Assembly (NCBI GenBank): GCA_977017575.1
Contig: CDRNVI010000054.1
Coordinates: 620,001 to 684,000, forward strand
Source: Paramoeba atlantica
Lineage: Eukaryota; Protista; Discosea
Reading direction: 5' to 3'
DNA: 64,000 bases
The notes beneath the pieces are model-generated. The model had not been told where the DNA came from. It did no database searches and was given only the letters and a program-made list of their open reading frames with translations. A program made the position numbers and the translations under genes. Every line of letters starts with the position of its first letter. Within the stretch, counting starts at the first letter, position 1. Shown here piece after piece: positions 3,677-47,270 of this stretch.

Positions 3677-4573
3677 ATGCCACACTTAACGCTACAGACG
3701 ATCGTGCGGCTCACATGTTCGGATATTCAGGAGCCATCGACTAAACGTCGTAAAGTCGAAACTCCAGTATCTTCGAACACCCATTCCGATAAACAAATTA
3801 CAAATATGAGATCGCGTATTGCCAAAGTGAGTGCTGCTAATTTACCCCAAGAGTATCACCTTGTTCGTCTCCTCGCGGAAGTCCACAACTTGGACGAATC
3901 GTGGAGTCTTGACACGCCAGCATGTGAGTGGAAAGGTGTGAGTTGTTTGGTGCGGCAAGAAGTCACCCGCATAGAATGGGGTCTACTACATTTGGCAGGC
4001 ACTATGAACCTGATTCATCTCCCACATAGTCTGTACCATTTTAATGCGGGTCAGAACGCTCTAGAAGGTGCGGTGCCGCTCACGCGCTTGCCTTCGGAAC
4101 TGCGATCACTAACTCTGTACGAAAATCGGTTTGAAGGCGAGTTGGACTTGACTTCCCTTCCGCACTGTTTCGTAGATTTGACTTTGAATGACAACAGGTT
4201 CAATGGAACTGTATGTTTGACGAGTCTGCCGTTCTATATGCAAAATGTGAACCTTAGCGGAAATCGTCTTACCGGGTCACTTGATTTGACTTTGCTTCCG
4301 CCTAACATTTGGCAAGTAAGTCTCGCTGGAAATCAGATGTCCGGCGAACTCGATCTTCGGCAACTTCCTTCGAGGATTTCTTACCTTGATTTGTCGCGCA
4401 ATATGTTTTCTGTTTATGTCAACTTGGCGAAGCTTTCATCTTCATTGATTGGTTTGGATTTATCAGATAATGTGAACTTGCGTAGCAATATAACAAGATC
4501 GCCATTCTCTGAAGATGTGCAAGAGTTCGGTTTGTGCGTGCATAACACACAGATAAAGCTCGAGAATCATTGA
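3677..4573 (+). CDS. Leucine-rich repeat protein, 298 aa (Cys N-cap plus ~7 plant-type LRRs)
   Basis: WSLDTPACEWKGVSC cap; LxxLxLxxNxFxGxxxLxxLP repeats; intact ORF; basic PSTKRRKV motif near the N-terminus. Confidence 0.92.
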   Translation: MPHLTLQTIVRLTCSDIQEPSTKRRKVETPVSSNTHSDKQITNMRSRIAKVSAANLPQEYHLVRLLAEVHNLDESWSLDTPACEWKGVSCLVRQEVTRIEWGLLHLAGTMNLIHLPHSLYHFNAGQNALEGAVPLTRLPSELRSLTLYENRFEGELDLTSLPHCFVDLTLNDNRFNGTVCLTSLPFYMQNVNLSGNRLTGSLDLTLLPPNIWQVSLAGNQMSGELDLRQLPSRISYLDLSRNMFSVYVNLAKLSSSLIGLDLSDNVNLRSNITRSPFSEDVQEFGLCVHNTQIKLENH

Positions 4574-5533: not shown

Positions 5534-5994
5534 TAATTTGCCTTCTTACTTTCCAGGCTGCGCTTGACGCTACACATGATCGTACGGCTCATGCTGTATG
5601 TTCGGATATTCAGGAGCCATCGACTAAACGTCGTAAAGTCGAAACTCCAGTATCTTCGAACACCCATTCCGATGAACAAATTACAAATATGAGATCGCGT
5701 ATTGCCAAAGTGAGCGCTGCGAATTTACCGCAAGAGTATCACCTTGTTCGTCTCCTCGCCGAAGTCCACAACTTGGACGAATCGTGGAGTCTTGACACGC
5801 CAGCATGTGAGTGGGAAGGTGTGGGTTGTAACGAGCGGGAAGAAGTCAGCCGCATGGAATGGGGTCAACTAGATTTGTCAGGTGCTATGAACCTGATTTA
5901 TCTCCCACATAGTCTGTATGATTTTGATGCGCGTCAGAACGCTCTAGAAGGTGCAGTACCGCTCACGCGCTTGCCTTCGGAACTGCGATCGCTA

Positions 5995-6025
5995 GCTATA
6001 AAGATACAGTTTCTGTACCTTGTTG
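5995..6025 (+). other. Kinetoplastid-type spliced-leader exon sequence (copy 1)
   Basis: GCTATAAAGATACAGTTTCTGTACCTTGTTG; contains the ACAGTTTCTGTAC core and TTG end; last 23 nt are 20/23 identical to the T. cruzi SL as recalled; not followed by GT. Confidence 0.85.
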
Positions 6026-6729
6026 TTTTTTTCCTAGCTCATCTTTTCTCTCCCGGAAACAGGCATATTTTTACTATGCGCATGCCCGTTTCCGGATGGC
6101 GCTAGGAAAGGAACTGTCCCTCTTGTCGTAAAGCAGGGGTGCGCCTCCCTTCCTTCATCTCCCACCACCCCGCTCGAACACGGTTCCGAGTCCCCATGCG
6201 CTGCAGGACCCTTCTACGGGACTACGCGACGTGCCTTCACCATCACGCGACACCGGTACTTCGCGGAGGAGGCTTCCAAACGCTTGAAGTCTCCCACACG
6301 GCGAGCAAACACGTTGTATGCGTGTTCTAGAGGATGTCCTATGCACCTCTCTTGCTCACCAGCCGTGGCGGATTATGTGGGACCCCGATGCCCAAGATGT
6401 ATCATGAACCATGACTCCATTTGCCAGCATGCATCCATGGCCCTGACCATGTTGTATCATGAACCATGGAGGTCATTTGTAGCATGTACGACGGGAATAC
6501 CATCTGCGTCCCACAAATCCGTATATCTTTCCTGGTGCATTGCGCTCACTGAGTATCGCGGGATATCTTATCCCGATGAGGCCGTTTCTTTTCGCTTTCC
6601 TGGGGATGATATCCCGAGCTTTCCCCTGTGTCGCCGCGGAGGCCGAAAGGGTCCAGCAGGGAGTGTTGATTGCGCCTACCCCTGCTGGGCCCTAATTATC
6701 TCTGCAGGTCTTGCCCTGCATGACAAAAC
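5995..6729 (+). mobile_element. SL-headed non-coding retro-insert 1 (candidate SINE-like element)
   Basis: Absent from intact LRR paralogues; SL, then structured head homologous to 10205-10354, a 55-bp direct repeat (6398/6453) and a 3' stem-loop at 6698-6723; the 5' edge may be 5991. Confidence 0.75.
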
Positions 6730-7778
6730 ACTATTCTGTGCGAAAATCGGTTTGAAGGCGAGTTGGACTTGACTTCTCTTCCCTACTGCTTCCATCATTT
6801 AACTTTGCATAGCAACAGATTCAATGGAACTGTATGTTTGACGAGTCTGCCGGTTAATATGCAAAGTGTGAACCTTCGCGAAAATCGTCTTACCGGGCCA
6901 CTTGATTTGACTTTGCTTCCGCCTAACATTCGGCAAGTAAATCTCTCTGGAAATCAATTGTCCGGCGAACTCGATCTTCGGCAACTTCCTTCGAGGATTT
7001 GGCACCTTGATTTGTCGCGCAATATGTTTTCTGGTGATGTCAACTTGGCGAAGCTCCCATCTTCATTGATGACTTTGGATTTATCGTATAATGTGAACTT
7101 GCGTAGCAACATAACAAAATCGCCATTCCCTGAAGATGTGCAAGAGTTCGGTTTGTGCGTATATAACACACAGATAAACCTGGAGAATCATTGAATCAGA
7201 TAAAAAGATAGAGAAAATAAAGAGAATTTAAAGAGAATAAAGAGCATGATAAAGGGAATAAAAATGTGTGGGCGGGGGATTTGGGGGGAGCTTCATTCAT
7301 TCAATAAATTCTATTGTTTTTGGAAGATCTTATAAACTTTCTTACCGTAAAAAAGTGTACGACCTGCCGTACCCCCTTGATTAATTTCTGTCGCTCAACA
7401 CCATTGCAAAAAATGTGCACAACAGACAACACATCCACAACGTGTATAACAGTCTAAAAGCAATGTCTGAGAACTGTGATTTGATTGAAGTTGTCTTACA
7501 AAAACGTATTGTTTACTTTATGTACGTCGCATGTGGCTTCTTAACTCCGCAATTTCCAGTCCCAAGCCTGGAGCAGGTCGCTCAAAGACCGGGAGAGGAG
7601 GGGGGAGCGATCATTCGGTCGAGTTGTACGCCTTGAATTGGATGTGTCAGTCTTGCCGATGACATTCGAACCGTATAGGGCTGGACTTAGCATGCTGCAG
7701 GGCAGTTAGACATGGTGAAGTACCGCAACACTCTCATGTTCCCGCTGGTAGGCTGTAACATTGGATGTCACATGCTGG

Positions 7779-8070
7779 TTAGTTACGGAGAGTTGGACTC
7801 CCTTGGCGCTGGTAGGCTGTGACATTGGATTGTTCTGACGAGTGAGACCGCCATCGTCCCATTAATTGCCTCTCTGAAATAGGAACACCACGGACTCGAA
7901 GCTCAGTGGCCTTCCCATGCCGCAATGAATGCATAGTCCATGTTCGAGTGTTGTCCATGTTCGAGTGTTCAAGTGGTGAGCTGCATCATTTATAAGTTTA
8001 TTAGTCAAACGTCGATTCCACCTCGGGAACAATAAGGAACCTGGATTGCCCTTCGCGAGGGCCTTCCATA
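7779..8070 (-). pseudogene. Tyrosine recombinase C-terminal relic (VIPER/TATE/DIRS-like)
   Basis: ...LLFPRWNRRLTNKLINDAAHHLNT...HSLRHGKATELR.RG...GRW.S...AY; parallels the intact YR at 15038-15994. Confidence 0.75.
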
Positions 8071-8082
8071 TACTGTACTATC

Positions 8083-9073
8083 AAAATATGCCCTTTTGAC
8101 CACGAGCGAAGTTCTGTACTCTGAACGCGGCTGGGCTCTCACCAGCCTGTCTAAGCTTTGGTTACTCTGCACAGGCACAGCAGTTGAACAGATGAAAAAA
8201 TCTCGTGATCCAGCAGTGCAACAAGCGCTGAGATATCGCATCCGTCGTGAGCTCGACAAACGCTCTTCCGGACAAGTGCGACAAGTCGTCGAGTTGTACG
8301 ACCGCAGTGAAAATCACGCATCGACACGGCAGTACATTGAACATGAATATGAAAGACATCTTTCAGAAGCTGTGCAGCGTCGAGCACCAATCGCGGGGCA
8401 GTGGTTTCGCATGGCTACAGAAGACGACCTCGCGAAAGACTTCGCTGCTGCTCTGTGCAATATAAAAAGTACGTCGCTCTCCAGATTTTCTTCATGTGTT
8501 CTGACACAGACACCGCTTCCGACCCGATCCGCCTTACACCGCTGGGGCCTCAGTCCCACTCGAACCTTAAATGCCCCATTTGCAAAGAAGACGTACAAAC
8601 TGTGAGCCACGTTCTCACAGGCTACAAGGTCGCTCTGCAACAGGGGCGGTATACCTTCCGTCATAACCTCATCCTACACGCCCTTGCAGATGCTATACGA
8701 CAATCCCCCGAAACCGCACAGTGTCACTTTGACCTCGCTCACTATCAGAATCCGCCAACCTGGCTGAGCGGGCAGGAAACGTCCCTCCGACCTGATGGAT
8801 GGATCAAACTTAAGAACGGTTCTGAGTTCATACTCGAACTGACATCTCCGTGGGAGGAAAACTTTATCTCCTCACACGAACGGAAGATGCAGAAGTATGG
8901 GCATCCTTATGTATCTACAAAGGAAAATGTCGAATCCAGCCACATTTCTCCTGGCCATTGAAGTAGGTGCCAGGGGAAAGCTCAACAGCTCAACTCGGGC
9001 ACTGAACTCCCTTCAGTGTCATGCGTCTTCTGGGTATCAATCTCTGCAGATAAACTGCATGAATATCATATTG
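8083..9073 (+). mobile_element. 3' fragment of an RLE-type non-LTR retrotransposon (HERO/NeSL/R4-like)
   Basis: CPICKEDVQTVSHVLTG.KVALQQGRYTFRHN zinc knuckle, RPD, ILELTSPWE, RKMQKY, AIEVGARG; frameshifted; 3' end joined to an LRR 3' end. Confidence 0.85.
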
Positions 9074-9186
9074 TATCGTATAATGTGAACTTGCGTAGCA
9101 ACATAACAAAATCGCCATTCCCTGAAGATGTGCAAGAGTTCGGTTTGTGCGTATATAACACACAGATAAAGCTGGAGAATCATTGA
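9074..9186 (+). pseudogene. LRR gene 3'-terminal fragment
   Basis: TATCGTATAATGTGAAC...GAGAATCATTGA essentially identical to 7082-7194. Confidence 0.9.
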
Positions 9187-9446
9187 ACCGAATAAAAGAG
9201 ATAGAGAGAATAAAGAGAATTTAAAGGGAATAAAGAGCATGATAAAGGGAATAAAAATGTGTGGGCGGGGGATTTAGGGGGAGCTTCATTCATTCAACAA
9301 ATGTTATTGTTTTTGGAAGATCTTATAAACTTTCTTACCTCAAAAGGGGGAGTACAGTATATGAACCTGGTGTCTAATATTTCACTGGGGTCGGAATCTG
9401 GTTTAAAATGACAGCGTCGCAAATCTATTTCTGTTCAAACTATTTC

Positions 9447-9662
9447 TCATGTTGCCGTATTGCGACTTGATGTAATGTCGCTGTTACGAGACAGTGTTTC
9501 TGCAGCATTTTGATGTCCAGGTATCCATCTTATGCTGAGGTGTAACTTCTTTTCTAGCTTCCATTTCGAAATAAATCTTACGATCGAGCAAACATGAGAC
9601 ACTGCGATATATCCTTTCGTAATTTTACTTTTTGCCGCGATGTTGTCTGTGGCGAGGACCAT
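9447..9662 (-). pseudogene. RNase H C-terminal fragment, DIRS/VIPER retroelement type
   Basis: ATDN...KG...LSIRWIPGHQNAAETLSR motif. Confidence 0.7.
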
Positions 9663-9815
9663 TATTTATTGTGCAACAATTTCAAAAGTTCCATGTAGTT
9701 CAAAAAAAAAGGTACTTTGTCTGAGAACAGTCTCCGAACACCGCTGTATAAAACACTAAAAACAATGTCTAAAAATAAATTCACTTTCATAATATAAATT
9801 GCCATCTTACTTTAC

Positions 9816-10861
9816 ATGCTGCGCTTAACCCTACGCACGATCGTGCGGGTCACATGTTCGGATACTCAGCGACCATCGACTAAACGACGTAAAGTCGAAA
9901 GCCCAATACCTTCCAACACTCATTCTGCTGAACAAACTGCAAAGACGAGATCGCGTATTGCCAAAGTGAGCGCTGCGAATTTACCTCACGAGTATCACCT
10001 TGTTCGTCTCCTCGCTGAAGTCCACAACTTGGAAGAATCGTGGCGTCATCACACGCCAGCATGTGAGTGGGAAGGTGTGAGTTGTAACGAGCGGGAAGAA
10101 GTCAGCCACGTGGACTGGGGTCAACTAGATTTGACAGGCACTATGAACTTGATTCATCTCCCACATAGTCTGTACGATAAAGATACAGTTTCTGTACCTT
10201 GTTGATTTTCCTTTAGTTCATCTTTTCTTTCCCCGGCAACGGGCATAGTCTTACTGTTTATATGCCCGTTGCCGGCCGGCACTAAGGCCGAAACTGTCCC
10301 TCTTCCTCGGTGAAGCAGGGGACGCGCTTCCACCCCATCACCCCTCCCCGGCTCACTCTTTTAGTGAGTTTTCTTCCCTCCCCGGCTTTCTTCCTTTCGC
10401 GCCTTTTCCTTCCCGGGGAGCCATGCGCCATGGTGGCTTCCCTTGAGGATCACTGGGCGTGACTCTGCCTTGTATTATCGCGAGGCAGCGGTCGGTTGCA
10501 GTGCGCCCCTCCGGCTGCGTAAAGAGGTAGTGAGTTGCCTGGACCACCTCTACCGACTGGGACCGAGTCGGTTGCAGTGCGCCCCTCCGGCTGCGTAAAG
10601 AGAGGGCGAGTTGCCTAGACCCCCTCTACCGACAGAGTCCGTGTCGAATGCCCCTCGGTGCGACATCCGCCATTGCGGATTGCGCTGATGATATCGGCCG
10701 TCGCATCAAGGGCTGTATCTCTGCGCCAGCGAGCGCATGAACATCAACTATCGTATAATGTGAACTTGCGTAGCAACATAACAAAATCGCCATTCCCTGA
10801 AGATGTGCAAGAGTTCGGTTTGTGCGTATATAACACACAGATAAAGCTGGAGAATCATTGA
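9816..10861 (+). pseudogene. LRR paralogue with the central LRRs replaced by SL-headed insert 2
   Basis: 5' part 9816-10178 and 3' part 10749-10861 match LRR paralogues; roughly 420 bp of LRR coding sequence is missing between them. Confidence 0.9.
10177..10748 (+). mobile_element. SL-headed non-coding retro-insert 2
   Basis: ATAAAGATACAGTTTCTGTACCTTGTTG (10177-10204), structured head, 76-bp direct repeat (10491/10567), 3' stem-loop 10717-10740. Confidence 0.75.
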
Positions 10862-11444
10862 ATCAGATAAAAAGATAGAGAGAATAAAGAGAATTTAAAG
10901 AGAATAAAGAGCATGATAAAGGGAATAAAAATGTGTGGGCGGGGGATTTAGGGGGAGCTTCATTCATTCAATAAATTTTATTGTTTTTGGAAGATCTTAT
11001 AAACTTTCTTACCTCAAAAAAGTGTACGACCTACCGTACCCCCTTGATTAATTTCTGTCGCTCAACACCAATGCAATGTGCATAACAGACAACACATCCA
11101 CAACGTGTATAACAGTCTAAAAGCAATATCTGAGAACTGTGATTTGATAGAAGTTGTCTTACAAAAACGTATTGTTTACTTTATCTACGTCGCATGTGGC
11201 TTCTTGGAAACTCCGCAGTTTCCAGTCCCAAGCCTGGAGCAGGTCGCTCAAAGACCGGGAGAGGAGGGGGGAGCGATCATTCGGTCGAGTTGTACGCCTT
11301 GAATTGGATGTGTCAGTCTTGCCGATGACATTCGAACCGTATAGGGCTGGACTTAGCATGCTGCAGGGCAGTTAGACATGGTGAAGTACCGCAACACTCT
11401 CATGTTCCCGCTGGTAGGCTGTAACATTGGATGTCACATGCTGG

Positions 11445-13295: not shown

Positions 13296-14876
13296 CTGTT
13301 ACCCCCCCCTTACTTAGCCCCCACTTTTTGGCCCAAAACTTTTTGGCCCTAAAACATACTTTGTGGTGAAGTAAGGGGGGTGGTGAAGTAAGGGGGGGAT
13401 TATTAAGTTGTCAAGTTCCTCCAGTAAAATCCTTATCGCCCGTCATGCTCACTTCAGGGTTGAATGAAATTTTCTGTTTCACGCTTGCCATAGTTCGGAA
13501 AGATCATTGACTTCATAAAATGAATTAAAAGATCATTGACTTCTACAGAAAGTAACTAACATCATGAAAATACGCTACGCCCGAATTTAGTTTCTAATGT
13601 GCCGGCTTAAATATATAAAATGAAGAAAGAAAATATGATACCTATAGAGGCTTTGCAAGACACTAAGTAAAACCACAGAAAAACTTAGATACGACGAATA
13701 TTAAAAACGGTGCTGTGGACGTAAAAAGCTGGGGAAGGTGAGGTGCGCTAAGCCCCAACACTGCCGAAAATATATGCAGTGTCCCTGACCTGCGGCCATC
13801 GTTAGTGCTTTGCGCAGAAATTGTCATTCTCTTCCCCCTTTTCTTCAATTGCACACATGTGATGAAATTTCGTTAAACACCCAGGTTCACTACACTCCCG
13901 TAGAGTTAAATTCACTCGCGTGCAATAACAACACTCCTGTACTGGGGTTGCGTTAAGCGCTGGATTCCTGTTACGCGCTGACTCTATGGCGGACTTCATG
14001 ACTTTCGCTTCTTCTTCTCCTTCCCTGTAGTTAAAACCTTTACGCGCTTTGTCCCTTTAGTGTCGTATGTGATTTCATTGACGGGCTCCCACACAACACA
14101 GGTCTCGTCCCGTGACGATTACAGCGTATCCCCCGCGATCACAATTTCGCAGAGCTATCATATTCAAAAAGGCTTCTATACGCTCGTCCATGTCTTTTGG
14201 GACCATTTGGGTTGCTCCATTGACTCTTCGTCGCGAAATATTGGCGAAGATGCAAAAACGAATCCAAAAATTTTCTTTTCCTTTGTCGGTAAGGGAACAG
14301 AAGTGCTCTGAAATTTCAGCAAAGTACCCCAACATTGTCGGTTTCGTGCCGAAAGAGACTCGCGTAGCAAAAGCAGTTGCGACAACCCTTTTTCATATAA
14401 TTCTTTATTTGCTCGAGGGGGGTGGTACTGAAACAATTTCCCAAAGCCAAGTTGAGTAAATTTATGCCAATCTTCTTTTTTCCGATAAACTCTATGTACC
14501 GTGCTTACCTCGACCTTGTAATCTCGGGCGGCGACGCTTATAGACTTGCCGGCATCTATACTAGCACATAGGTTGTTTTTTTGTTGTATGGTAAGATCCA
14601 TCCGAACCTTCCGCGGCTGCTCAGCAAGCTGGTTAGATGCATTCAACATTAATGCGGTGGATGGGGTAGTTGAAGTATCATCGGGGAAGAGCAGTACGGC
14701 AACAGTTTCGTGTGGCAACGGTGAGGATTGAGTCACTTGGCTCGCGTTAAAGAATAGAAGTGGTGGGGCCATCGTGTATTGAATAAATATTGAAATCAAT
14801 GAAATTTTACAATTTCTGACTGAATTTCTGAAATGTGGTGAAGTAAGGGGGGAGGTGAAGTAAGGGGGGGTAACGG
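13296..14876 (-). mobile_element. pogo/Tc2-like element with internal deletion, TA flanks
   Basis: TIRs CTGTTACCCCCCCCTTACTT / AAGTAAGGGGGGGTAACGG; TA at 13294-95 and 14877-78; four subterminal GTGAAGTAAGGGGGG motifs. Confidence 0.85.
13802..14799 (-). pseudogene. pogo-like transposase relic: N-terminal HTH, CENP-B-like HTH and C-terminal PHD-like finger, no DDE core
   Basis: GKSISVAARDYKVEVSTVHRVY HTH; RFCIFANISRRR; CCYC...CSEPGCLTKFHHMCA...FC..H; three broken frames. Confidence 0.65.
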
Positions 14877-15037: not shown

Positions 15038-15994
15038 TTACACTATAGAATATGCTTCCGCGCTGAATGCGGACATCCATCGACCTCGTAAAAGTCGTGT
15101 AGAGAGCTCACTGCCTTGGCGGGTGAGGTGACCGGCACCCCCATGACGGAGACAGTGGAACGACCAACTCTGGCGCTTATTCCATTTAAAATGTGCAGCT
15201 GCTGCACATATCAAGGCGTTAGCCTTGACTTTGTTCCAGTACGGAAGTAGTAGAACGGTAGTACCGACGTTTTTTAGGTAAGTTAATAGATGCTGAACTT
15301 CTGGTACGAGTACGATGTCAACCTCATAGTGGAGGCGTCCTTTTCCACCACGAACCCGTAGAGTCGCAGTTTCTGTCTCGACATCGTCTCTGCGTAATAA
15401 CGCCATTTCACTATGCCGCAAGAGGCCGAAATACGCTATAGCAAAGCCCCGAGCGTATTCTAATTCCTCAGCCTCACGGCAATACTCTGTCAGTTGTGTT
15501 AGTTGGTCAAAGGTAATCGAGCCCCTGGGTTGGGGATCCAGGCACAAACGAGTGGCTCCTTTGAACCGCCGTCGAAAACGGGTCGTTTGTGCCAAGCATC
15601 GCTCTATAGGTGTCTCTTCAAGTTGCCGCCATACTAGGGCAGCGCGTAAAGCCTCTAGCCTTGATGCTCGATAAAATCGAGATAGGCATACACAAAGAGC
15701 CAAAAAGGCTTCTTCGGTAATGTTGCATACGCCGTGTACTCCCAAGAAATGCTCGATACTTGAGAAGTTAAGGGATCGCCTTCGAGCAGTTTCTGGGGCT
15801 ACAGCAAGTTGGGCGAGCTGTGAGTGGACGTTTGCTTGAAGCAAACGTTGTGTTTCATCTTGTACTATTTGATCACTTATACGGTGACGTCTAAGTTGTG
15901 GCATAATTGAGTCTTCAAGAGAAATAGTGAATATCTGTTCAAATAACTCTTGAACTAACTTGGTATGACTGTAGGTCGATGTTACAGGGACCAA
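15038..15994 (-). CDS. Tyrosine recombinase (VIPER/TATE/DIRS-like), catalytic residues intact
   Basis: GLLRHSE, GGKGR, FHCLRHG, GRW, EAY = R-K-H-R-W-Y set; the track start is TTG and the first ATG is about 30 codons in. Confidence 0.88.
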   Translation of the reverse strand: MVPVTSTYSHTKLVQELFEQIFTISLEDSIMPQLRRHRISDQIVQDETQRLLQANVHSQLAQLAVAPETARRRSLNFSSIEHFLGVHGVCNITEEAFLALCVCLSRFYRASRLEALRAALVWRQLEETPIERCLAQTTRFRRRFKGATRLCLDPQPRGSITFDQLTQLTEYCREAEELEYARGFAIAYFGLLRHSEMALLRRDDVETETATLRVRGGKGRLHYEVDIVLVPEVQHLLTYLKNVGTTVLLLPYWNKVKANALICAAAAHFKWNKRQSWSFHCLRHGGAGHLTRQGSELSTRLLRGRWMSAFSAEAYSIV

Positions 15995-16656
15995 ACACCG
16001 AGCCGAATACCTTCTGGTTCGCCGTTGGCTATCGGTGAATCCGGAGGGGAGTCTGCCAAGAGCTTTGCGTAATGCAAAGTGTCAGGTCGGTTCCCCACTG
16101 ATTCCTTCACAGCCCTTTTTACTTGTTGAACAAACCAAGGTTCTGTGGTGAAACCGGTGTCCGTGAGGCTTTGGTGCAGTTGGTTACCGCACCGAGGATC
16201 TTCGCGCGTTCCGATAAGCGTGCGAAATGCAGTGCGAAGATCCTTGCTGTTGCGCTCGTCTCGGAGGGGAGTGCTAGCCTCTTGGACGACCAGATTGCTT
16301 TCATTTTCCTCCAACTCTGACTCGAGTGCGCAAATCGCATCACGTAGTGCCACAAGAACAGTTTGGGCAACGTGTTCCGAGGTGAAATCTCCGCGCAACA
16401 TAGCTTCAAGTGTGCGGCGGACGATGCGGGCTCCATTCACGGTGTTTCCCTTTGCAGATGTGACAGCAGCGCTTTCGAGAATGGGCGTGATAGCCTTTTT
16501 CTCCTTTACGTACTGAATCGCTTTTGGGAGACTCGCAACTAATTCATCCCGTACAGTTACACCCAATCGTTTAAGGGAACATAACTCAAAGAAAGCACTT
16601 TTTGGACTTTCTGTTGTGTAGCTTTCTGGGACAAGGTTAGGTAAGGCGTCGGGCAT
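15982..16656 (-). CDS. Putative gag-like ORF overlapping the YR
   Basis: 224-aa ATG ORF directly upstream of and overlapping the YR by 13 nt, the ORF1 position in VIPER/TATE; no diagnostic motif recognised. Confidence 0.5.
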   Translation of the reverse strand: MPDALPNLVPESYTTESPKSAFFELCSLKRLGVTVRDELVASLPKAIQYVKEKKAITPILESAAVTSAKGNTVNGARIVRRTLEAMLRGDFTSEHVAQTVLVALRDAICALESELEENESNLVVQEASTPLRDERNSKDLRTAFRTLIGTREDPRCGNQLHQSLTDTGFTTEPWFVQQVKRAVKESVGNRPDTLHYAKLLADSPPDSPIANGEPEGIRLGVWSL

Positions 16657-17613: not shown

Positions 17614-18074
17614 TAATTTTCCACATCTGCGCTGCAATGCCAGGGTAGGCGTCCGACCTATGCCGGTTGCAGAAGTGCACTTCACTGCCCTGAGCAGGTG
17701 CTAGTGAAGTATTACATCCGTTTTTGTCGTCGCTTCGACGTCTTTCTCTCAGGTGAATTCGCCCTTTCATGCTCCTTGTCCGCTGAACGCTTGGTACGTC
17801 TCTCATGCAACTCTGTATTTTTGGCATCACATTCCCCAGGCAAACGCTCCTTTTCAGGAGAATCCACTCCAGCCCCTACAGATGGCGAGGTACCATCGAG
17901 AGAGGATCACCGTCTGTAATCTTGTAGTAATCCCGTCTTTTCCCTAATGGCTTAGGTATTTGGCCAATGTGTTTCCAAGGGAGATTCATGGTTTGAATGG
18001 TTTCCGGGCTAACCCTTTGAGCTTCTGAAGCACTTGTCGAAGTCCTTCTCCTCCTTATTTCTGAGGCTGGGACT

Positions 18075-18154
18075 ATTTTTCTCGACCCTGCAAGCGCCAA
18101 GGTGTCTGCCTTCTCGTTGTAAATGTTCCCGTTGTGAGACTTCACTTTACACAC
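18075..18154 (-). pseudogene. RNase HI-type C-terminal motif fragment
   Basis: KVKSHNGNIYNEKADTLALAG at the start of ORF 17876-18154. Confidence 0.65.
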
Positions 18155-19475: not shown

Positions 19476-20250
19476 CCGTTGGACCCGCCCCAGTAATAGA
19501 CCCCCCCCGTAACAAGGATTTGACCCTTGTGGCGTCTCCCGCAACCGCACCAGGATCTTTCGAGTTCCCGAAGTGTTTCCGAATTTCATGTTCTAACCGT
19601 CCAATCAAGTTGCTTCGGTACAGCTCACTGCAGAAATGACGGTATTCCCATTCTTTCGGGCGGGAAGGTTTTTCCTGGGGGAGATTATGAGCCGCGAGAT
19701 CATACCCACCGGGTGCCGATACACTTTGTTCGCAAACGGGGGCTTTGGCCTCCAGACGTGGGCTTCGCTCACAGTTGGGCCTGGCCTCCAGACACGTAAA
19801 CTAAGTGTTACTGTCGTGGGCTACGCTCACAGTTTGGCCTTATGTGACAGAGCATAGGAAAATACACAGTGTAGAATCATACAGGTAAGTCTGCAGAGAT
19901 TTATAAGGTGAAGACGCGCACAAAACGCGTTTTTGTCACCTGTTTCTATTCAGCGGCACTAAGAACGTTCTCCTGCATCCGATTTTTGTCGTTGCGGTGT
20001 TGATGCACTATGTCATAGTGCTAGTATGAAGCTCCCACTCAGAGCCTTAACGGTCATATTGCGCCGGCACTCAGCAACCAGCTCATCATTATATTCTACA
20101 ATATACTCCTTCCCGTTGGAAATAGTCATTGTTTGCTTTTCTTTCGTACGAACGACTTTGACTGAAATCACTCCCACTGGCGCTAAAGTTTTCCCCTTCA
20201 GTTCGCCGTCGACGCTAACGCTAGTTTCATCTCCGAAAATAACATACACT
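19476..20250 (-). mobile_element. pogo-like relic with one terminus
   Basis: VIFGDETSVSVDG...EKQT motif (20013-20249, shared with the 2330-3617 family); TA-CCGTTGGACCCGCCCCAGTAATAGACCCCCCCCGTAA terminus at 19476. Confidence 0.5.
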
Positions 20251-20405: not shown

Positions 20406-21821
20406 TTATTGCCGCAATAATAATATTGCGTTCATAAATAATTCATAAATAATTCGGATCTCTCTGAAACCGCACGAAACCGCGGCGAAACCGCGCGAAA
20501 CCGTGCTGACTCCCTTTCTCCCTGAAAGCTTGGCACCACTGTGAAATGAGTTCATGTAACCTTTTCTAAGCTTGAAAATAGGGGTTTCAGTCCAAGAGGT
20601 CAGTGCACTTTTCGCCACGTTGTTTAGAAATTGTCCGACACATGGAATAAGTACGAGCTTTGGAAATGGAGTCTGAGTGTTGTTTTCTAATGGATGAATC
20701 GCACTACGAACGGAGTTGCTTACATCTGTCCAATCTTGAGTGCCTAGTCTAGACAAACGATGAAAGAAGTCTGCAAGCTCACTTTCAGCTTCATCACGTG
20801 CGACATGATTTACCGCTGCCCCGTCAGCAATAATGTACGCCCATTTGGCCAACCGTGCAGCACCTAAATGCCGACGTAGATCGTTGACGATAAGCATGCC
20901 AATTTCTGCACCATTAAACGAGCCTCTTCTAGGGTGATACATGGGGGGGAGGATCCACTCAAAAGGGCCAACGTACAATACCACAACCATGATGTGTTCG
21001 CTTAGTACTTGATCCGTACCCCCATCTATGGCAACGCCAAAGATATCATATTCGTCAATCGAGCCCAATATTTTCTCCCACAACACGTGAGATATTTCAA
21101 CGATATCATTTTCGAATGACCTCACAGTTTTCGGGATTTCCCTTCGCATTACTTCACTTGGGGCATCAGGACGAACTTCTTCCAATTGACGAAACAAACG
21201 AACGGCCACGGAAAGAGGAATGTTCGTACTTGCTATCGCAGTTGGAAACACCTTGTGCCAAAACTCATGAGGACTGATTTCCTTCGCTTTGGGAGTCTGA
21301 ACGTCACGACTGATTCCTGAACAATGGTGGTTAAGGTGCATGTTGTATGTGGATTCGCAATGTGAATGAAACACCTCTTTGCAGTATCGACACCGAAGAT
21401 GAAGTGAGTGTCCCGAGGCGTCCTTCAGTGCCTGTTCTTCATATTGGTTGCGTACCTCGGCAGCTTTACATACTGAATCATTGCTACACACCTCGTCAAG
21501 AAAATGAGCCTGAATGCTGGCTTTCTTGAGAAGATTTATACTTCCCCGTGTACGTGTCCTTTTCTTGGCCCGGTTCGGAGTGGCTTGAGCATCGAGGGAA
21601 GACTGGGAGGGAGCTTCCGAGATTCTTTGTGACATTGTGGCAGCTGCTTCTCGGCGGTCTCTAGCCGAAGCAAGTGTTCTAGGAGGTGTTGCATCATCCA
21701 CTCCAGGCAAAATGATCCCCTCGTTTCTCACTAAATTCGTTGGAGCGGTATTCGATGGAGGTGGCGCTGGGGAATCTGAATCCGGTACAGAGCGGCGTGC
21801 TCGTGGCTTCTCTTTGGGCAT
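20406..21821 (-). pseudogene. hAT transposase, N-terminal two-thirds (family 1)
   Basis: BED-like CRYC...HLNHHC finger, VAIDGGTD and IIADGAAVN aspartates, IPCVGQFLN (CxxH variant); catalytic Glu and dimerisation domain absent. Confidence 0.8.
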
Positions 21822-25062: not shown

Positions 25063-25959
25063 ATGCCACACTTAACGCTACAGACGATCGTGCGGCTCAC
25101 ATGTTCGGATATTCAGGAGCCATCGACTAAACGTCGTAAAGTCGAAACTCCAGTATCTTCGAACACCCATTCCGATGAACAAATTACAAATATGAGATCG
25201 CGTATTGCCAAAGTGAGTGCTGCTAATTTACCCCAAGAGTATCACCTTGTTCGTCTCCTCGCGGAAGTCCACAACTTGGACGAATCGTGGAGTCTTCACA
25301 CGCCAGCATGTGAGTGGGAAGGTGTGATTTGTTTGGAGCGGGAAGAAGTCACCCGCATAGAATGGGGTCTACTACATTTGGCAGGCACTATGAACCTGAT
25401 TCATCTCCCACATAGTCTGTACGATTTTAATGCGAGTCAGAACGCGCTGGAAGGTGCGGTGCCGCTCACGCGCTTGCCTTCGGAACTGCGATCACTAACT
25501 CTGTACGAAAATCGATTTGAAGGCGAGTTGGACTTGACTTCCCTTCCGCACTGTTTCGAAGATTTGACTTTGAATGACAACAGGTTCAATGGAACTGTAT
25601 GTTTGACGAGTCTGCCGGTCAATATGCAAAATGTGAACCTTAGCGGAAATCGTCTTACCGGGTCACTTGATTTGACTTTGTTTCCGCCTAACATACGTCA
25701 AGTATATCTCTCTGGAAATCAGTTGTCCGGCGAACTCGATCTCCGACAACTTCCTTCGGGGATTCGGCACCTTGATTTGTCGCGCAATATGTTTTCTGGT
25801 GATGTCAACTTGGCGGGGCTTCCATGTTCATTGAGGGGTTTGGATTTATCAGATAATGTGAACTTGCGTAGCAACGTAACAAAATCGCCATTTCCTGAGC
25901 ATGTGCAAGAGTACGGTTTGTGCGTATATAACACACAGATAAAGCTCGAGAATCATTGA
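25063..25959 (+). CDS. Leucine-rich repeat protein, 298 aa
   Basis: Intact paralogue of 3677-4573. Confidence 0.92.
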   Translation: MPHLTLQTIVRLTCSDIQEPSTKRRKVETPVSSNTHSDEQITNMRSRIAKVSAANLPQEYHLVRLLAEVHNLDESWSLHTPACEWEGVICLEREEVTRIEWGLLHLAGTMNLIHLPHSLYDFNASQNALEGAVPLTRLPSELRSLTLYENRFEGELDLTSLPHCFEDLTLNDNRFNGTVCLTSLPVNMQNVNLSGNRLTGSLDLTLFPPNIRQVYLSGNQLSGELDLRQLPSGIRHLDLSRNMFSGDVNLAGLPCSLRGLDLSDNVNLRSNVTKSPFPEHVQEYGLCVYNTQIKLENH

Positions 25960-27105
25960 ATCATTTATAGTTGCATCATTTATAGTTTATTAGTCAAACG
26001 TCGATCCCACTTCGAGAACAATAAGGAACCTGGATTGCCATTCGCGAGGGCCTTCCATTAACCACTGTATACCGTACTATCACTATCGCCTTCGCCATCC
26101 CCTTCATTTTACCCTTCATTATCGCCATGATCATCCCATGATTCCGGTTTTCCGCGTTTCTTAGTGGGGGGGAGGCGCAGTGGCCGCCGTTGGAAAAACA
26201 ACTAGTGGCTGGATCGGGACTTTCATATTCACGAGAATAGCAGGCCGAGGCAAATGAAGTGTGTCCTAGGGGCTAACTGACGATGAATGCACAGCATGGA
26301 CTGTAATACCCCCCGTGACAACATCCACTTCCTTTCGGTAACCTCGGTCTCCTTTAAGCCTGCTATACCGGCCCAAAGCCCGGAGCCACGTATCAGTTCG
26401 ACCGTACGGTGGAAAGGTGATGGAAAGAGAAATCGTAATCAAAAGAATTTGTAAAAAAATCTACTATCTAAACTTGTTTAATACTAAACTATGTTCCAGG
26501 ATAGTATACCCGTGCCCACTTAGTATACCTACCCCCCCCTCCCAGCAACAGGAGCGGGAGACATCCCTTTTTTAGAAGCGACAGATCCATTTTCTAGCCA
26601 TCACACGGCAAGAAATCGCATTTTAAGGTCAAGGCAACATTTTTCTAGCAACTACTGATAAATTAAATATAATTATAAATTATTTTTTGCTTTTTAGACA
26701 AAATTTAGTATACCCATACATCTCCCTAGTACGGATAGTACGGTACTTCATACATTTTGAAAAACGTTTTGTGATGAAGCGGGACCTTGACTATGAATTT
26801 CAATCAAAGAAAGCTCGTGTTTTTTATTGGTAAACAATGATGGGATTATGAACAATGATGGGATATGATGGGAGTATGTAATGTTGGGATCGTAGAGTTC
26901 TACGGAAGAAATTGGAAAGCAGGATTCGGAGCTCGTTAGCTTCAACGTCTCCACCAGCGTCCCCTTCATCATCCCCATCATCGTTCCCTTCGTCATACCC
27001 TCCATCCCCTTTATCATTCCCCTCATTATCCCCATCATCTCCTTCATCATCCGCTTCACTCTCTGGTATTCTTTTTACCCCGTAGACGCATGTCTTCAGC
27101 TTATA

Positions 27106-27533
27106 CCGTATACCCCCCAGGAAGAGAGATTTGGCTCTTTTTGGGCTGGCCCCCAGTAAGAGAGATTTAGCCCTTATTCTGGGCAATCAAATGAGGTTGA
27201 AGCACAGAGAAGAAAACGCACAATCAAAAACAAAGAGTCAATATTTTATATGAAGCATACGAAAATCAAATATAGTTGGGCTGGAGTCTTGGACAACGCT
27301 TTCTAACGCAAGTTGTATGCGAATGTCCGTTGTCATAACTTAAAAAAAGTAGATGAAATGAAATCAATGACAGAATGACAATTTCTTTTAGACAGAACTA
27401 TTCGAAAAAGAGAAAAACTCTAAAAAAAAGGTTGTCAAAAAAGTTTGGAGAAAAAAGAAAACTGGCCTAAAAAGCATAACCCCCCAGTAAGAGAGATTTG
27501 GTCAAAACCCACTCTTACTGGGGGGTTGTACGG
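27106..27533. mobile_element. pogo-type MITE, 428 bp (also 33637-34064 and 40165-40592)
   Basis: TA-CCGTATACCCCCCAG...CTCTTACTGGGGGGTTGTACGG-TA; internal CCCCCAGTAAGAGAGATTT repeats. Confidence 0.8.
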
Positions 27534-27715
27534 TAGTACCCCATTGGGGTGCAAAGGAACCTTCCTAGGCAATAAAGAAAAAGTTTCTGTAACTTTTCGT
27601 TCCCTTGCTTTTTTTGGCGATGGACCCCGCTAGATATCTGTCGCATTTTGACCCCCGTAACTATCTGTCACACCCATACCTGTAAAATTATTAATAATTT
27701 TTCCTTCTAATAATA

Positions 27716-27811
27716 CTGTCCTCCCTCCCCTTAAGCGCACACGGTCAGACCCCCCCCCCGTTTAAGCGCACTTTTCACGGAAAACGAGGTGCGCTTAAAC
27801 GGGGGGGACAG
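27716..27811. mobile_element. 96-bp foldback mini-element (also 34247-34340 and 40775-40870)
   Basis: TA-CTGTCC...TTAAGCGCAC / GTGCGCTTAAACGGGGGGGACAG-TA with an internal inverted copy. Confidence 0.75.
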
Positions 27812-27879
27812 TAATTATTATTAAAGAATTATTAATAATTATTAAAGTACATCCTAATGCCGAAAAGTATGGACCATAT

Positions 27880-27971
27880 TCGCGTCGAGAACTCTCCTTT
27901 GCAACAAAACTCAGGTGAAACGGACCCAAGGACAAAAACAGGAGGTGTCCTGATATTGGCGATCCCCCCTG
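27880..27971. repeat. Solo TIR of a second Tc1 subfamily (present in each tandem unit)
   Basis: CTCTCCTTTGCAACAAAACTCAGGTGAAACGG aligns with the TIR at 1704-1813; ends CCCCCCTG-TA. Confidence 0.7.
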
Positions 27972-28344
27972 TATAAGGTTTCAATACTGGTGGCAGAGGC
28001 AAAGTTCATCCACTTCTTGATATGGTGGGTGGTTCTCTTTTGTAGCCTCTCAATGAATGAGTAAGGCTGGCATGAACAACGAATGAAAGCGCAATTTGGA
28101 TAGGACGGCGTGTTGGTAGATCCATAGTTTGGATGAGAACCTTTGGATTAAACCCGTAGTGGATTAGGAGGTTTCTGAAGGCCTCCTTGACCTCCTTCTA
28201 CATAAAATAAGGGAACACTAATTAAGGGAATAAGTTTTTTTGAAAACCATTTTCCCTTAATTAGTGTAATTCTTAATTAATGTTTCCACGGTATATCTCA
28301 TTTTTTGTTATAATTTATAATTTATAAAAATTAATGAGAGGGAG

Positions 28345-30518: not shown

Positions 30519-30959
30519 GGATTTACTTTCCACGCTTCTTTCCTTGAATCTAGAACGTAGTAGTTTCTCAGGCAACGTTCCGTTAGAACTATTGCCTGGT
30601 CATCTGGAAAAACTGGACCCGAATACTTTTTCGTGATGCTAGATTTCGGGACCGTGCCGAAAACCGTGGTCAAACTGAGTGTCTCCCGCAATCAGTTTGC
30701 AAAGATCTTGTGATCAAAGCGGATGGATGACGTTCTGAGAGTGATGAATAGAACAACTTGTAGGTCATCATAATACACACAAGAACAATTTGTAGGTCGT
30801 CGTCGTCGTTCTCAAAATAGATAACGCACACGAATTTATAACGCGCACGAATAAAGCGAAAGTATAAAATCACAAAACAAATACCTAAAAAAGACTATTT
30901 AAAGTGCATTAAATTCAGTAACTCGAATTTTCAGGAATCAATTTTCAGGAATTGAATTT

Positions 30960-32027
30960 CTGTAGGATTAGACGAGGATACATCCCCTTATCCTTGACGG
31001 AAAATAAGGCGGCAAGAAAAATAGTCAGTGTTTGCTTTTCATTCGTCCGAACGACTTTGACTGAAATCACGCCCACTGGCGCTAAATATTTCCCCTTCAG
31101 TTCGCCGTCGACGCTAACGCTAGTTTTATCTCCGAAAATAACATAGCTGTACTGACGAACATCGTGCTGCGAGTACAGATGATGCGACCATCGTCTTATT
31201 CGTTGATCAATATCTGCCGGCGTGATAGCTTGAGTTTTTCCAAACGTTCGTCAAGTCCATCAAAACACGTAACGACTCATCAACTGGAGCACCCTATTTC
31301 GAGTGATAGGGATATGACCATTCCACAGACCGAGAAGGGTTTCATGAAACTTTACCATAAAATCTTGTCGCGAGCTATTGAAGGCTCACTCACGCTTCCG
31401 GTCGCGACCTCCACGATTCATTCTTGATTGATAATCTTTTTCTCCGACTCGCTTTATTTTCCGTATGGTCTCCTCGGCAATATTATGACTTCGCAAGTTT
31501 TGATACGGAAGACGAAGAACGACACACGTACAACTTGTCTTGCACCGACAAGTGTTTTCTGCGGTATAATGATGGAGGAACAAAGGGAGGGAGAGAGGGA
31601 CGTGCTTAAAAGAGAATTTTGGGGAAGAGAGATACCAGGTTCTTGTCCGGAAACAAAAGGTCCGACCACATGTGATACACGAGCCACTGGAGTTCGCGAA
31701 ATGATCCAGTTGCTTAACGGTCCACGCGGCACCAGATCCTCCCGAAAATTCATAGGACAATAATTTTCAGGAGAAGTTTTCTATAGTTCCTAAACAAGGT
31801 CTTGCAGCTTTTTTATACACTATTTTACACTCGGATAGCTATGCACCGGAAAAACGCCGCTGCTTCTTTCATCGGCGGATTTCATAAAAAAAATGCCCCC
31901 CCCCTAAACAAATCTTTGGCCTTTTAGACAAAATAGCCCTATCAAAGGGGGGGCGGGCACGCGTAGCCCTATTAAAGTTTATGTCTCTTTTCCACGAAAC
32001 GTAGTGACTGAAAACTACGGGGTACAG
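30960..32027 (-). mobile_element. pogo-like 5' half inside the tandem unit (also 37490-38555)
   Basis: Homologous to 2330-3617; ends GGGGTACAG-TA. Confidence 0.6.
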
Positions 32028-46760: not shown

Positions 46761-47270
46761 AAGAAAAAAAGAGCTTATTAAACGTGCGGGTACAGCACGT
46801 ATTTGCACACCCTGGTTCCGTATCCCAGCCTTCTTGACGCACGTCGAAAGATGTTCGCAAGATGTTAACTCTCGTTTACAATGCAGTAGATCTGTTTTTC
46901 TACCGAGGCGAGGTGGAGCAACAACTACCCAACCAACACGGAGAAAAATACCTCAGCTAAGCTGCTTACCACATTCCCGTATTCATAAATGATGTGTGCA
47001 AGGGAACGGACAACGTAGGTTCGGTCACGTCACGTGGTCCCGTATTAGGGTCCTGCGACGCATACGATCTTGTTGCTTGTGAGGCCATTAAGATACAGTA
47101 AAAGGTAAGAAAAATAAAGCAGCAAGGTATAGAAACTATACAAAAAATATACGTCTCAGATGAGTGTGTAACACAAAATTATCCCGCTGCAGGGTTTCAT
47201 TTTCCTGCTATTGGCCACAAAAAAGGAGCTTGTTTCCCCTTGTTTTTCGTTTGTACACTAAAACCTGCAC

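What the first reader, a model, noticed from the sequence alone, without database searches (positions are those of the whole stretch)
5995..10748. Candidate new retroelement system: spliced-leader-headed non-coding inserts that disrupt LRR genes
Seen: two inserts (5995-6729 and 10177-10748) interrupt LRR paralogues. Both begin with (GCT)ATAAAGATACAGTTTCTGTACCTTGTTG, share a ~150-nt head, have unrelated bodies that each contain a two-copy direct repeat (55 bp, 76 bp), and end in the same small stem-loop with no poly(A) tail. Known: ACAGTTTCTGTAC...TTG is the conserved core of the kinetoplastid/diplonemid SL exon; SL RNA genes continue with GT; SLACS/CZAR/CRE retrotransposons target SL genes. 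Inference: these are reverse-transcribed, trans-spliced SINE-like RNAs, or non-autonomous derivatives of an SL-targeting element, inserted away from the SL array. The head is not the ingi/L1Tc signature of RIME/NARTc/SIDER.
Basis: partly seen in the sequence, partly recalled or inferred. Interest (0 to 1): 0.92.

Follow-up and report, generated by a model that had tools for sequence, protein, structure and literature searches.

The report
Non-autonomous retroposons with spliced-leader heads
The two non-coding inserts that break leucine-rich-repeat genes are short hitch-hikers of an R2-like jumping gene lying between them; hitch-hikers and master all begin with the last 28 bases of the spliced leader and end in the same small hairpin, a combination I found no description of in the literature I searched.

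Summary
Inserts at 5998-6729 and 10177-10748 interrupt LRR paralogues. They share a ~155-nt head and end in a CTCT-hairpin-ATGA motif with no poly(A). Their first 28 nt equal positions 11-38 of a genuine 38-nt spliced-leader (SL) exon, recovered from an SL/5S tandem repeat in a metagenome.

Window ~8095-9075 is a 5'-truncated non-LTR retrotransposon (reverse transcriptase, CCHC, restriction-like endonuclease; closest solved relatives are R2 proteins) with the same tail. Contigs of the same organism held eight more LINE 5' ends, at least six on long RT-bearing ORFs. Each starts with the same partial SL and, where the 3' end was in reach, ends in the hairpin, whose stem keeps pairing through 12 different sequences.

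LINEs and inserts also share an internal GC hairpin. Nine or ten insertions sit at one phase of the LRR repeat.

So these are SIDE/SINE-like non-autonomous elements, most likely mobilised by that LINE clade. The SL piece is a conserved 5' hallmark of the whole clade, not a full trans-spliced leader: positions 1-10 are absent in 14 of 14 copies. No LINE copy lies in an SL array, no named SLACS/CZAR/CRE relative was found, and a ribozyme test failed. The origin of the leader stays open.

The parts
5998..6729 (+). SINE/SIDE-like element, subfamily 1 (732 bp; only copy seen). It interrupts an LRR gene. Bases 5995-5997 (GCT) are extra junction bases. Target duplication: GCTA 5991-5994 and ACTA 6730-6733.
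   Evidence: (empty-site paralogues). Its 162-aa ORF has no Pfam match. ORFs are not conserved among SINE copies.
5998..6025 (+). 5' leader, equal to SL exon positions 11-38 (28/28 to the L006 SL gene).
6053..6095 (+). Long hairpin of the shared ~150-nt head (14-bp arms). One arm position changes on both sides between subfamilies.
6198..6235 (+). GC hairpin motif (GCGC..CC[CT][CT]-loop-[GA][GA]GG..GCGY) shared with the 5' coding region of the LINEs.
6700..6729 (+). 3' tail: CTCT-GCAGG-loop-CCTGC-ATGA plus CAAAAC. No poly(A).
8095..9075 (+). 5'-truncated copy of the autonomous LINE. Its last ~1.15 kb is 95.6% identical to the full-length L004 copy, with a 177-bp internal deletion. It holds the CCHC and RHN..RPD..E endonuclease domain (ORF 8401-8961). 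Tail hairpin at 9042-9062, tail end at 9075. It joins the LRR gene at the same base as insert 2.
10177..10748 (+). SINE/SIDE-like element, subfamily 2 (572 bp). Other copies: L005 at 93.6% and L004 at 86%. Leader 10177-10204, 76-nt tandem repeat 10491-10642, GC hairpin within 10413-10473, tail 10719-10748. About 420 bp of the LRR gene is deleted at the site.
47020..47146 (-). Decayed 5' remnant of a LINE of the L012/L009 type: degenerate leader (47120-47141), T-rich UTR with an ATG, and the GC hairpin.
19877..19898 (-). Isolated tail-like motif (CTCT-GCAG-loop-CTGT-ATGA). The element it belongs to was not identified.
5534..7194 (+). LRR paralogue broken by insert 1. The break falls between ..LPSELRSL and (T)LYENRFEGEL.
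9795..10862 (+). LRR paralogue broken by insert 2. The 3' junction lies before ..SYNVNLRSN, the same site as the LINE fragment's junction at 9075/9076.

Best explanation
The two inserts are non-autonomous retroposons, SIDE/SINE-like, of two subfamilies. A clade of autonomous R2-superfamily non-LTR retrotransposons in the same genome most likely copies them in trans. That clade encodes a reverse transcriptase, a CCHC knuckle and a restriction-like endonuclease.

Shown:
- LINEs and short elements share three cis modules.
  a. A 5' leader equal to SL exon positions 11-38.
  b. An internal GC hairpin.
  c. A terminal CTCT-hairpin-ATGA motif followed by a short variable or simple-repeat end instead of poly(A).
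- Insertions recur at one phase of the LRR repeat, between LPxxLxxL and xLxxNxFxG. They come with a small target duplication or a target deletion, and with stuttered 5' junctions.

Inferred:
- The LINE protein recognises the 3' hairpin on its own RNA and on the short RNAs, as in 'stringent' LINE/SINE pairs and R2.
- It nicks the target and primes reverse transcription there.
- The template RNA, or the finished cDNA, ends at leader position ~11.
- The 5' junction forms by template jumps or microhomology.

The SL piece is a constrained 5' hallmark of the whole clade, comparable in role to Pr77 of ingi/L1Tc. It most likely descends from an ancestor that lived in, or captured, the SL exon. It is not a leader freshly added by trans-splicing at each round.
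For: Partner LINE:
- The window fragment at ~8095-9075 has CCHC/RHN/RPD..E motifs. These fit the REL consensus quoted.
- Long ORFs of 1417-1561 aa, and two-ORF forms, occur in L004 and L007-L012.
- The best solved relatives are R2 proteins, E=1.5e-29, aligned from RT through endonuclease.

Leader:
- 14 of 14 complete 5' ends begin at SL position 10-13, and 25-28 of 28 bases match the genuine exon.
- LINE families that otherwise align only in ~70% patches are 92-98% identical over their first 43-61 nt.

Tail:
- 15 of 17 3' ends have a 4-6-bp stem flanked directly by CTCT and ATGA.
- There are 12 different stem sequences, and each scores p=0.002-0.04 against shuffles.
- Every LINE 3' end within reach has the motif.

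GC hairpin: present in 13 elements, with 4 of 8 predicted pairs keeping pairing through changes on both sides.

Short elements:
- Three subfamilies. Subfamily 2 has three dispersed copies at 86-94%.
- ORFs are not conserved and have no Pfam match.

Insertion:
- An empty site and a 4-bp duplication exist for insert 1.
- Nine or ten independent events fall at the same LRR phase. The LINE fragment and insert 2 are joined at the same base of two paralogues, each with its own family's tail.
- Duplicated leader starts appear at 5' junctions.
- Simple-repeat tails occur: (ATC)4 and (AT)n.
Against: - Only 1-3 copies of each short subfamily were seen, because the whole genome could not be searched.
- A target duplication is documented for one event only.
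- No RNA data exist, so the 5' end of the template is inferred from DNA junctions.
- No LINE with exactly the stem of subfamily 2 (GCGC/GCGC) was found, so the specific partner of each subfamily is unknown.
- Insert 2 and the LINE fragment share a 3' junction. That could in part reflect duplication or gene conversion rather than two hits.
- The mechanism that fixes the 5' end at position ~11 is unexplained. An HDV-like P1 pairing is no better than chance (P=0.19), and Rfam finds no ribozyme in the heads.
Confidence: 0.8

Rival explanations
1. Retrocopies of trans-spliced RNAs. Each element RNA receives the SL exon by trans-splicing and is then reverse-transcribed. The 5' loss would be simple truncation.
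For: - The SL segment stops exactly at the exon's last base in four divergent LINE lineages. It is followed by A or T rather than intron sequence (against the gene).
- It stays identical to the genuine SL while the neighbouring UTR diverges.
Against: - Positions 1-10 are missing in 14 of 14 copies, with ends clustered at positions 10-13. Random 5' truncation would scatter.
- There is no poly(A).
- Genomic copies read TTG, not AG, at the boundary, so a copy cannot be re-spliced at that point.
- The acceptor-like signal in LINE UTRs lies downstream, just before the ATG. Spliced mRNA would therefore lack the conserved UTR that all copies keep.
- In the less decayed short copies the leader is followed by GTAC, matching the first three intron bases.
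Confidence: 0.12
2. An SL-gene-specific element of the CRE/SLACS/CZAR kind. Its home is the SL array, and the copies seen here are off-target insertions. The element brings SL positions 11-38 so that insertion after position 10 rebuilds a whole exon driven by the SL promoter.
For: - The leader starts 8 nt before ACAG. From my memory of the T. brucei SL sequence, that is the equivalent of the 11/12 insertion point of SLACS and CZAR. The site itself is documented.
- The LINE has the same RT plus REL-endonuclease build.
- SLACS is reported to be transcribed from +1 of the interrupted SL gene.
- The L004 LINE tail abuts an SL head at about position 12-14.
Against: - None of 11 LINE copies lies in an SL array.
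- CRE elements end in poly(A). These do not.
- Two protein searches returned no named SLACS/CZAR/CRE relative. The named and solved relatives found are R2.
- Phase-specific LRR insertion is shared by several divergent LINE lineages, so it is not an accident of one family.
- The L004 junction can equally be a second hit at the same LRR site.
Confidence: 0.3
3. The head is part of an SL RNA gene repeat, or an SL RNA-derived SINE head (exon plus intron).
For: Some copies continue with GTAC after ...TTG, and the head is a structured RNA.
Against: - The genuine SL intron (GTATGAGAAGC..., a terminal hairpin and a T run) shares only its first 3 bases (GTA) with the sequence after the leader in the heads.
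- Positions 1-10 and the promoter are absent.
- LINEs carry the same leader followed by their own UTR and ORF.
- No Rfam small-RNA family matches the heads.
Confidence: 0.03
4. The 5' end is cut by a self-cleaving ribozyme built on the leader, as in R2 and L1Tc. The leader would then be upstream target sequence kept on the RNA.
For: - R2 RNAs are cut up to 36 nt upstream, inside 28S, and the retained target bases guide 5' joining.
- L1Tc/ingi carry HDV-like ribozymes at the 5' end.
- In the short heads, ACAGTTTC can pair with a downstream GAAACTGT. The variants of that partner are all A-to-G changes opposite U.
Against: - Pairing of the first 10 nt with downstream sequence is no better than in shuffles (sum 90 against 86.2, P=0.19).
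- The LINEs have no conserved partner for the second helix.
- The topology differs from HDV-like folds.
- There are no Rfam ribozyme hits in the heads.
Confidence: 0.1

Closest known systems
R2 and its SIDEs (short internally deleted elements) in Drosophila (PMC3414825, PMC3774820)
   Same: - An RT plus restriction-like endonuclease LINE. R2 proteins are the best solved matches.
- A structured 3' end without poly(A).
- Non-autonomous partners that keep only the 5' and 3' ends.
- Target-derived bases can sit at the RNA 5' end.
- Variable 5' junctions and template jumps.
   Different: - The target is not 28S rDNA.
- No HDV-like ribozyme could be shown.
- The 5' leader is part of the SL exon.
- The short elements have their own ~150-nt head and bodies not found in the LINEs.
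- The N-terminal region has Cys/His repeats rather than a recognisable C2H2/Myb.
CRE clade: SLACS, CZAR, CRE1, CRE2 (PMC12278014, PMC5814959)
   Same: - A euglenozoan host.
- RT plus REL endonuclease, with the C..C..H..C / RH[DN] / RPD..E motifs.
- An intimate link to the SL exon. The leader begins at the equivalent of their 11/12 insertion point.
   Different: - No copy here lies in an SL array.
- These elements have no poly(A).
- No named CRE relative was retrieved.
- The 2025 trypanosomatid mobilome survey (PMC12278014) lists short partners for INGI and VIPER but none for CRE.
ingi/RIME, L1Tc/NARTc and SIDER with the Pr77 hallmark
   Same: A kinetoplastid LINE and its short derivatives share a conserved 5' hallmark that outlasts the divergence of the rest of the element.
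   Different: - Those are APE-type LINEs with poly(A).
- Their hallmark is a 77-nt promoter/ribozyme, not SL sequence.
TcTREZO (inserted in MASP pseudogenes) and other site-specific LINEs of multicopy genes
   Same: Preference for one site in a multicopy protein-gene family.
   Different: A different element type. Here the preference is for a phase of a repeat motif (LRR), and several LINE lineages and their short partners share it.
Relict spliced leaders in dinoflagellate retrogenes; NeSL-1 of nematodes (from memory)
   Same: SL sequence fixed in genomic DNA through reverse transcription, or a LINE tied to SL genes.
   Different: - Those relics come from whole mRNAs with poly(A).
- NeSL-1 sits in SL1 genes.
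- Neither is a LINE/SINE pair with a partial leader as its 5' end.

Membership tests
LINE-dependent non-autonomous retroposon (SINE/SIDE, stringent type) | 3' end shared with an autonomous LINE of the same genome | tested here: met
   The CTCT-hairpin-ATGA tail occurs in 5 of 6 short copies and 10 LINE 3' ends, with 12 different stems that keep pairing.
LINE-dependent non-autonomous retroposon (SINE/SIDE, stringent type) | No coding capacity of its own | tested here: met
   The longest ORFs differ between copies (49, 85 and 127 aa in subfamily 2). The insert-1 ORF has no Pfam hit.
LINE-dependent non-autonomous retroposon (SINE/SIDE, stringent type) | Dispersed copies with independent flanks and target-site alterations | tested here: met
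   Subfamily 2 sits at three loci and subfamily 3 at two. An empty site and a 4-bp duplication exist for insert 1. The copy number in the whole genome is not known.
Classical SINE | Head derived from tRNA, 7SL or 5S with a pol III promoter | tested here: not met
   No Rfam hit to such RNAs in the heads. The head starts with SL positions 11-38.
R2 superfamily (RLE-bearing non-LTR retrotransposons) | RT followed by CCHC and a PD-(D/E)xK restriction-like endonuclease | tested here: met
   Pfam RVT_1 and zf-RVT. Motifs are CPIC..H..C, RH[DN] and RPD..E. R2 structures match at E=1.5e-29 across RT through RLE.
R2 superfamily (RLE-bearing non-LTR retrotransposons) | 5' HDV-like self-cleaving ribozyme | tested here: inconclusive
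   No Rfam hit. The P1-type pairing is not above chance.
R2 proper | Insertion in the 28S rRNA gene | tested here: not met
   Flanks are LRR genes, microsatellites or other sequence.
CRE clade (SLACS/CZAR/CRE1/CRE2) | Insertion at a fixed position of SL RNA genes | tested here: not met
   None of 11 LINE copies has SL positions 1-10 upstream or SL intron downstream. SL arrays of this organism could not be fetched.
CRE clade (SLACS/CZAR/CRE1/CRE2) | Poly(A) 3' end | tested here: not met
   Tails end 6-14 nt after ATGA, or in (ATC)n or (AT)n.
CRE clade (SLACS/CZAR/CRE1/CRE2) | RT groups with CRE references in a tree | not testable with these tools
   No CRE, SLACS or CZAR sequence could be obtained. 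The single-protein and profile searches list none by name among the hits shown (all 79; the best 120 of 317).
Processed retrocopy of a trans-spliced mRNA | Complete SL exon at the 5' end and poly(A) at the 3' end | tested here: not met
   Positions 1-10 are absent in 14 of 14 copies. There is no poly(A). The exon-end boundary is exact.
SL RNA gene | Whole exon followed by the SL intron, in a tandem array | tested here: not met
   The genuine gene and intron are in L006. The heads differ after the exon beyond their first 3 bases (GTA) and lie inside LRR ORFs.

The most novel reading that the evidence does not exclude
A lineage of R2/CRE-like elements uses part of the spliced leader as a working 5' module, in one of two ways.

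- It could rebuild a complete SL exon when it lands in an SL gene, giving a promoter-driven, capped mRNA look-alike. It would then have since re-aimed its endonuclease at one phase of the LRR repeat of a protein-gene family.
- The leader, followed by GU in the short elements, could engage the SL RNP or trans-splicing machinery.

Either way, this would be a site-specific LINE/SINE system that remodels a surface-type LRR gene family in an uncultured euglenozoan.
Probability: 0.25. Interest if true: 0.85.

Novelty: new variant of a known kind. Interest (0 to 1): 0.62.

Why it matters
- It adds a previously undescribed LINE clade and its first short partners to the mobile elements of kinetoplastid-like protists. 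The 2025 trypanosomatid survey I read (PMC12278014) lists short partners for the ingi and VIPER groups but none for CRE.
- A partial spliced leader kept as a conserved 5' end raises a question. How do retroelements obtain a usable 5' end in organisms where every mRNA must be trans-spliced?
- The question is testable: map the RNA 5' ends, and look in the SL arrays.
- Repeated in-phase hits in LRR repeats show a retroelement acting as a directed mutagen of one gene family. That may drive pseudogene formation and turnover in these tandem clusters.

Tried and rejected
1. Rfam, at gathering thresholds and at E-value thresholds, over the window and the inserts. No SL, snRNA, tRNA or ribozyme family matched the heads.
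2. An HDV-like fold. A P1-type helix between the first 10 nt and nt 29-100 is no better than in shuffles (P=0.19). The second helix occurs only in the short heads. Idea dropped to low weight.
3. The head as SL intron. Rejected against the genuine gene in L006.
4. LRR targets as SL look-alikes. By eye, AAC-NNN-TTT in the targets resembles ACAGTTTC, but it lies about 5-6 nt out of register with the nick. Not pursued and not claimed.
5. CRE membership. Two of the three allowed protein searches (a single protein and a 5-sequence profile) gave no named CRE relative. The old CRE1, CRE2 and SLACS papers are not held.
6. The organism's own SL array. An exact-ORF look-up from L006 found nothing. A genome-contig scan for the leader found nothing. 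A literature search for the SL string found nothing.
7. Organism name. No relative at 90% identity or more carries a name.
8. A MAFFT column alignment of the tails misplaced four sequences. I used a per-sequence stem table instead.

Full report
**Observation**

The window is a tandem cluster of LRR genes from a eukaryote. Intact paralogues are the ORFs 3677-4573, 25063-25959 and 58750-59649.

Against these paralogues, insert 1 is a clean insertion.
- Homology stops at 5994 and resumes at 6729/6730.
- GCTA at 5991-5994 and ACTA at 6730-6733 form a 4-bp target duplication.
- Three extra bases sit at the 5' junction.

Insert 2 (10177-10748) replaces about 420 bp of its gene.

The two inserts have these features in common.
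- The SL core 13-mer occurs only at the two heads. The expected number is 0.05.
- The heads align over 155 nt at 78.7%.
- The internal repeats are real.
- Both ends carry CTCT-stem-loop-stem-ATGA with no poly(A).
- An ENA contig of the same organism is 100% identical over 14.6 kb. That argues against a window-specific assembly error.

**Is it the spliced leader?**

One metagenome contig (L006) contains the 20-mer.
- Its two ends overlap, so it is a ~1.78-kb tandem unit.
- It carries a 5S rRNA gene at 98 bits.
- It carries an SL RNA gene with a 38-nt exon, then GTATGAGAAGC, a terminal hairpin and a T run.

SL RNA genes linked to 5S genes are, to my knowledge, an arrangement known from kinetoplastids and diplonemids. 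The inserts match exon positions 11-38 at 28/28. What follows the leader in the inserts shares only its first 3 bases (GTA) with the intron.

**The missing partner**

Window ~8095-9075, between the inserts, encodes the C-terminus of a non-LTR retrotransposon. It has a CCHC knuckle and RHN, RPD and E motifs, which fit the REL-endonuclease consensus quoted in PMC12857005. It ends in the same tail motif, and it joins the LRR gene at the same base as insert 2.

Protein searches led to more copies on other contigs of the same ENA assembly.
- The window fragment is 95.6% identical to the 3' part of a 4.9-kb copy in L004, apart from a 177-bp deletion.
- Apparently intact ORFs of 1417-1561 aa exist in L007 and L009-L012.
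- The best solved relatives are R2 proteins, E=1.5e-29, aligned from RT through endonuclease.
- Named sequence relatives are R2-like. The closest named protist hit is a transcript of the prokinetoplastid PhF-6.

**Three shared modules**

1. Leader.
   - Eight LINE 5' ends and six short-element 5' ends all start at SL position 10-13, with 25-28 of 28 bases matching the exon.
   - None has positions 1-10.
   - LINE families that otherwise align only in ~70% patches are 92-98% identical over their first 43-61 nt. The 5' end is therefore under constraint, or is renewed.
2. GC hairpin.
   - It lies 100-130 nt into the LINEs, inside the ORF, and 200-320 nt into the short elements.
   - It is found in 13 elements. 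Four of eight predicted pairs keep pairing through changes on both sides.
3. Tail.
   - 15 of 17 3' ends have a 4-6-bp stem directly flanked by CTCT and ATGA.
   - There are 12 different stem sequences.
   - A short variable end follows, sometimes expanded to (ATC)4 or (AT)n.

**The short elements**

There are three subfamilies.
- Subfamily 1: insert 1, the only copy seen.
- Subfamily 2: insert 2, plus copies in L005 (93.6%) and L004 (86%).
- Subfamily 3: copies in L004 and L005 (91%).

Their ORFs are not conserved and match no family. The ~150-nt head is a structured RNA with a 14-bp hairpin that shows one change on both sides of a pair.

**Where they land**

Nine or ten independent events fall between LPxxLxxL and xLxxNxFxG of an LRR repeat.
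- They are four LINEs and five or six short elements.
- Three sit in successive repeats of a single L004 gene.

Eight other elements lie elsewhere, two of them in microsatellites. No LINE copy is in an SL array.

5' junctions often hold duplicated leader starts or duplicated target bases. R2 shows similar template-jump junctions (PMC3414825).

**Mechanism**

What the sequences support is a stringent LINE/SINE partnership. I infer the steps that follow. The LINE protein binds the tail hairpin. It nicks a preferred target and primes reverse transcription there. The 5' end is then joined by jumps or microhomology.

Why every copy starts at leader position ~11 is not settled. That position is 8 nt before ACAG. 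From my memory of the T. brucei SL, it corresponds to the 11/12 site where SLACS and CZAR insert; the site itself is documented in PMC5814959. SLACS is reported to be transcribed from +1 of the broken SL gene (PMC3447711). An element that brings positions 11-38 would rebuild a whole exon at such a site.

Several findings argue against present-day SL targeting.
- No copy lies in an SL array.
- There is no poly(A), which CRE elements have.
- No named CRE relative was retrieved.

The exact exon-end boundary hints at an origin by splicing. Against continuing trans-splicing stand the missing first ten bases, the TTG (not AG) boundary and the missing poly(A).

R2 suggests another route: a ribozyme that cuts upstream in target sequence (PMC3774820). 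My test for the required pairing was negative, and Rfam finds nothing.

**Verdict**

- This is a new variant of a known kind: an R2/CRE-like LINE clade with SIDE/SINE-like partners, marked by a partial spliced leader at the 5' end and a preference for one phase of LRR repeats.
- The host is an unnamed euglenozoan. A REH2-type helicase domain and the SL/5S unit point to a kinetoplastid or a close relative.

Noticed in passing
window 7538-7606, 43148-43216, 59988-60056 (+); also ~11204 and ~4913: A twister-P1 ribozyme-like motif lies ~350 nt downstream of the LRR stop codons. It scores 29-33 bits against a gathering threshold of 67, with best E=1.9e-4. The core bases (UAAC..GC, CCAGUCCCAAGCCUGG, GGAGGG) are present, but one hairpin is missing. 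It is conserved among the duplicated copies, which are not independent of each other.
   Followed up: partly
L004 5620-5705; L007 5927-5942; L003 21395-21420; L012 3716-3728: 5' junctions of the elements carry tandem copies of the first 8-12 leader bases, each followed by one odd base. In other cases a duplicated stretch of target flanks a short leader piece. This looks like reverse-transcriptase template jumps or later slippage.
   Followed up: partly
LINE 5' UTRs: L004 5729-5763, L007 5962-6000, L010 3391-3430: After the leader comes a conserved AATTATTTTCAATTTTGTACTAAC box. It contains TACTAAC, which is branch-point-like. A pyrimidine tract follows, and an AG sits just before the ATG. This looks like a trans-splice acceptor that could yield a translatable mRNA lacking the leader relic.
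   Followed up: no
N-terminal 100-350 residues of the LINE ORFs (P0231, P0239, P0240, P0242): Two or three repeats of a Cys/His motif, CxHxCxxKxxCxHxCCK, with no Pfam match. It is a candidate DNA-binding module where R2 has zinc-finger and Myb domains.
   Followed up: partly
L011 8660-8690: The LINE tail is followed by 17 nt identical to part of the subfamily-2 body, and then by (GT)n. The same LINE's 5' end also abuts (GT)n.
   Followed up: no
window 15038-16656 (-), 17876-18154 (-), 14176-14799 (-): A tyrosine-recombinase ORF (Phage_integrase, 2e-8), an RNase H scrap and a CENP-B_N ORF. These are probably remains of a DIRS/VIPER/TATE-type element and a pogo-like transposase.
   Followed up: no
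window 20406-21821 (-); L002 2235-4859 (-): A 471-aa ORF in the window resembles, by eye, an 874-aa ORF with no Pfam match that interrupts the L002 LINE. The relationship was not tested. It may be an uncharacterised DNA transposon.
   Followed up: no
window 25970-42724: A ~6.5-kb unit is repeated 2.5 times in tandem at 99.2-99.6% identity. The ENA contig of the same region ends exactly where this repeat begins.
   Followed up: no
P0012, P0013, P0237 (Perkinsela 'polyprotein'): Proteins of ~1000 aa combine the same endonuclease domain with a Tc-38 (p38) domain and have no RVT_1 (reverse transcriptase) Pfam hit. They may be a separate or domesticated lineage in prokinetoplastids.
   Followed up: no
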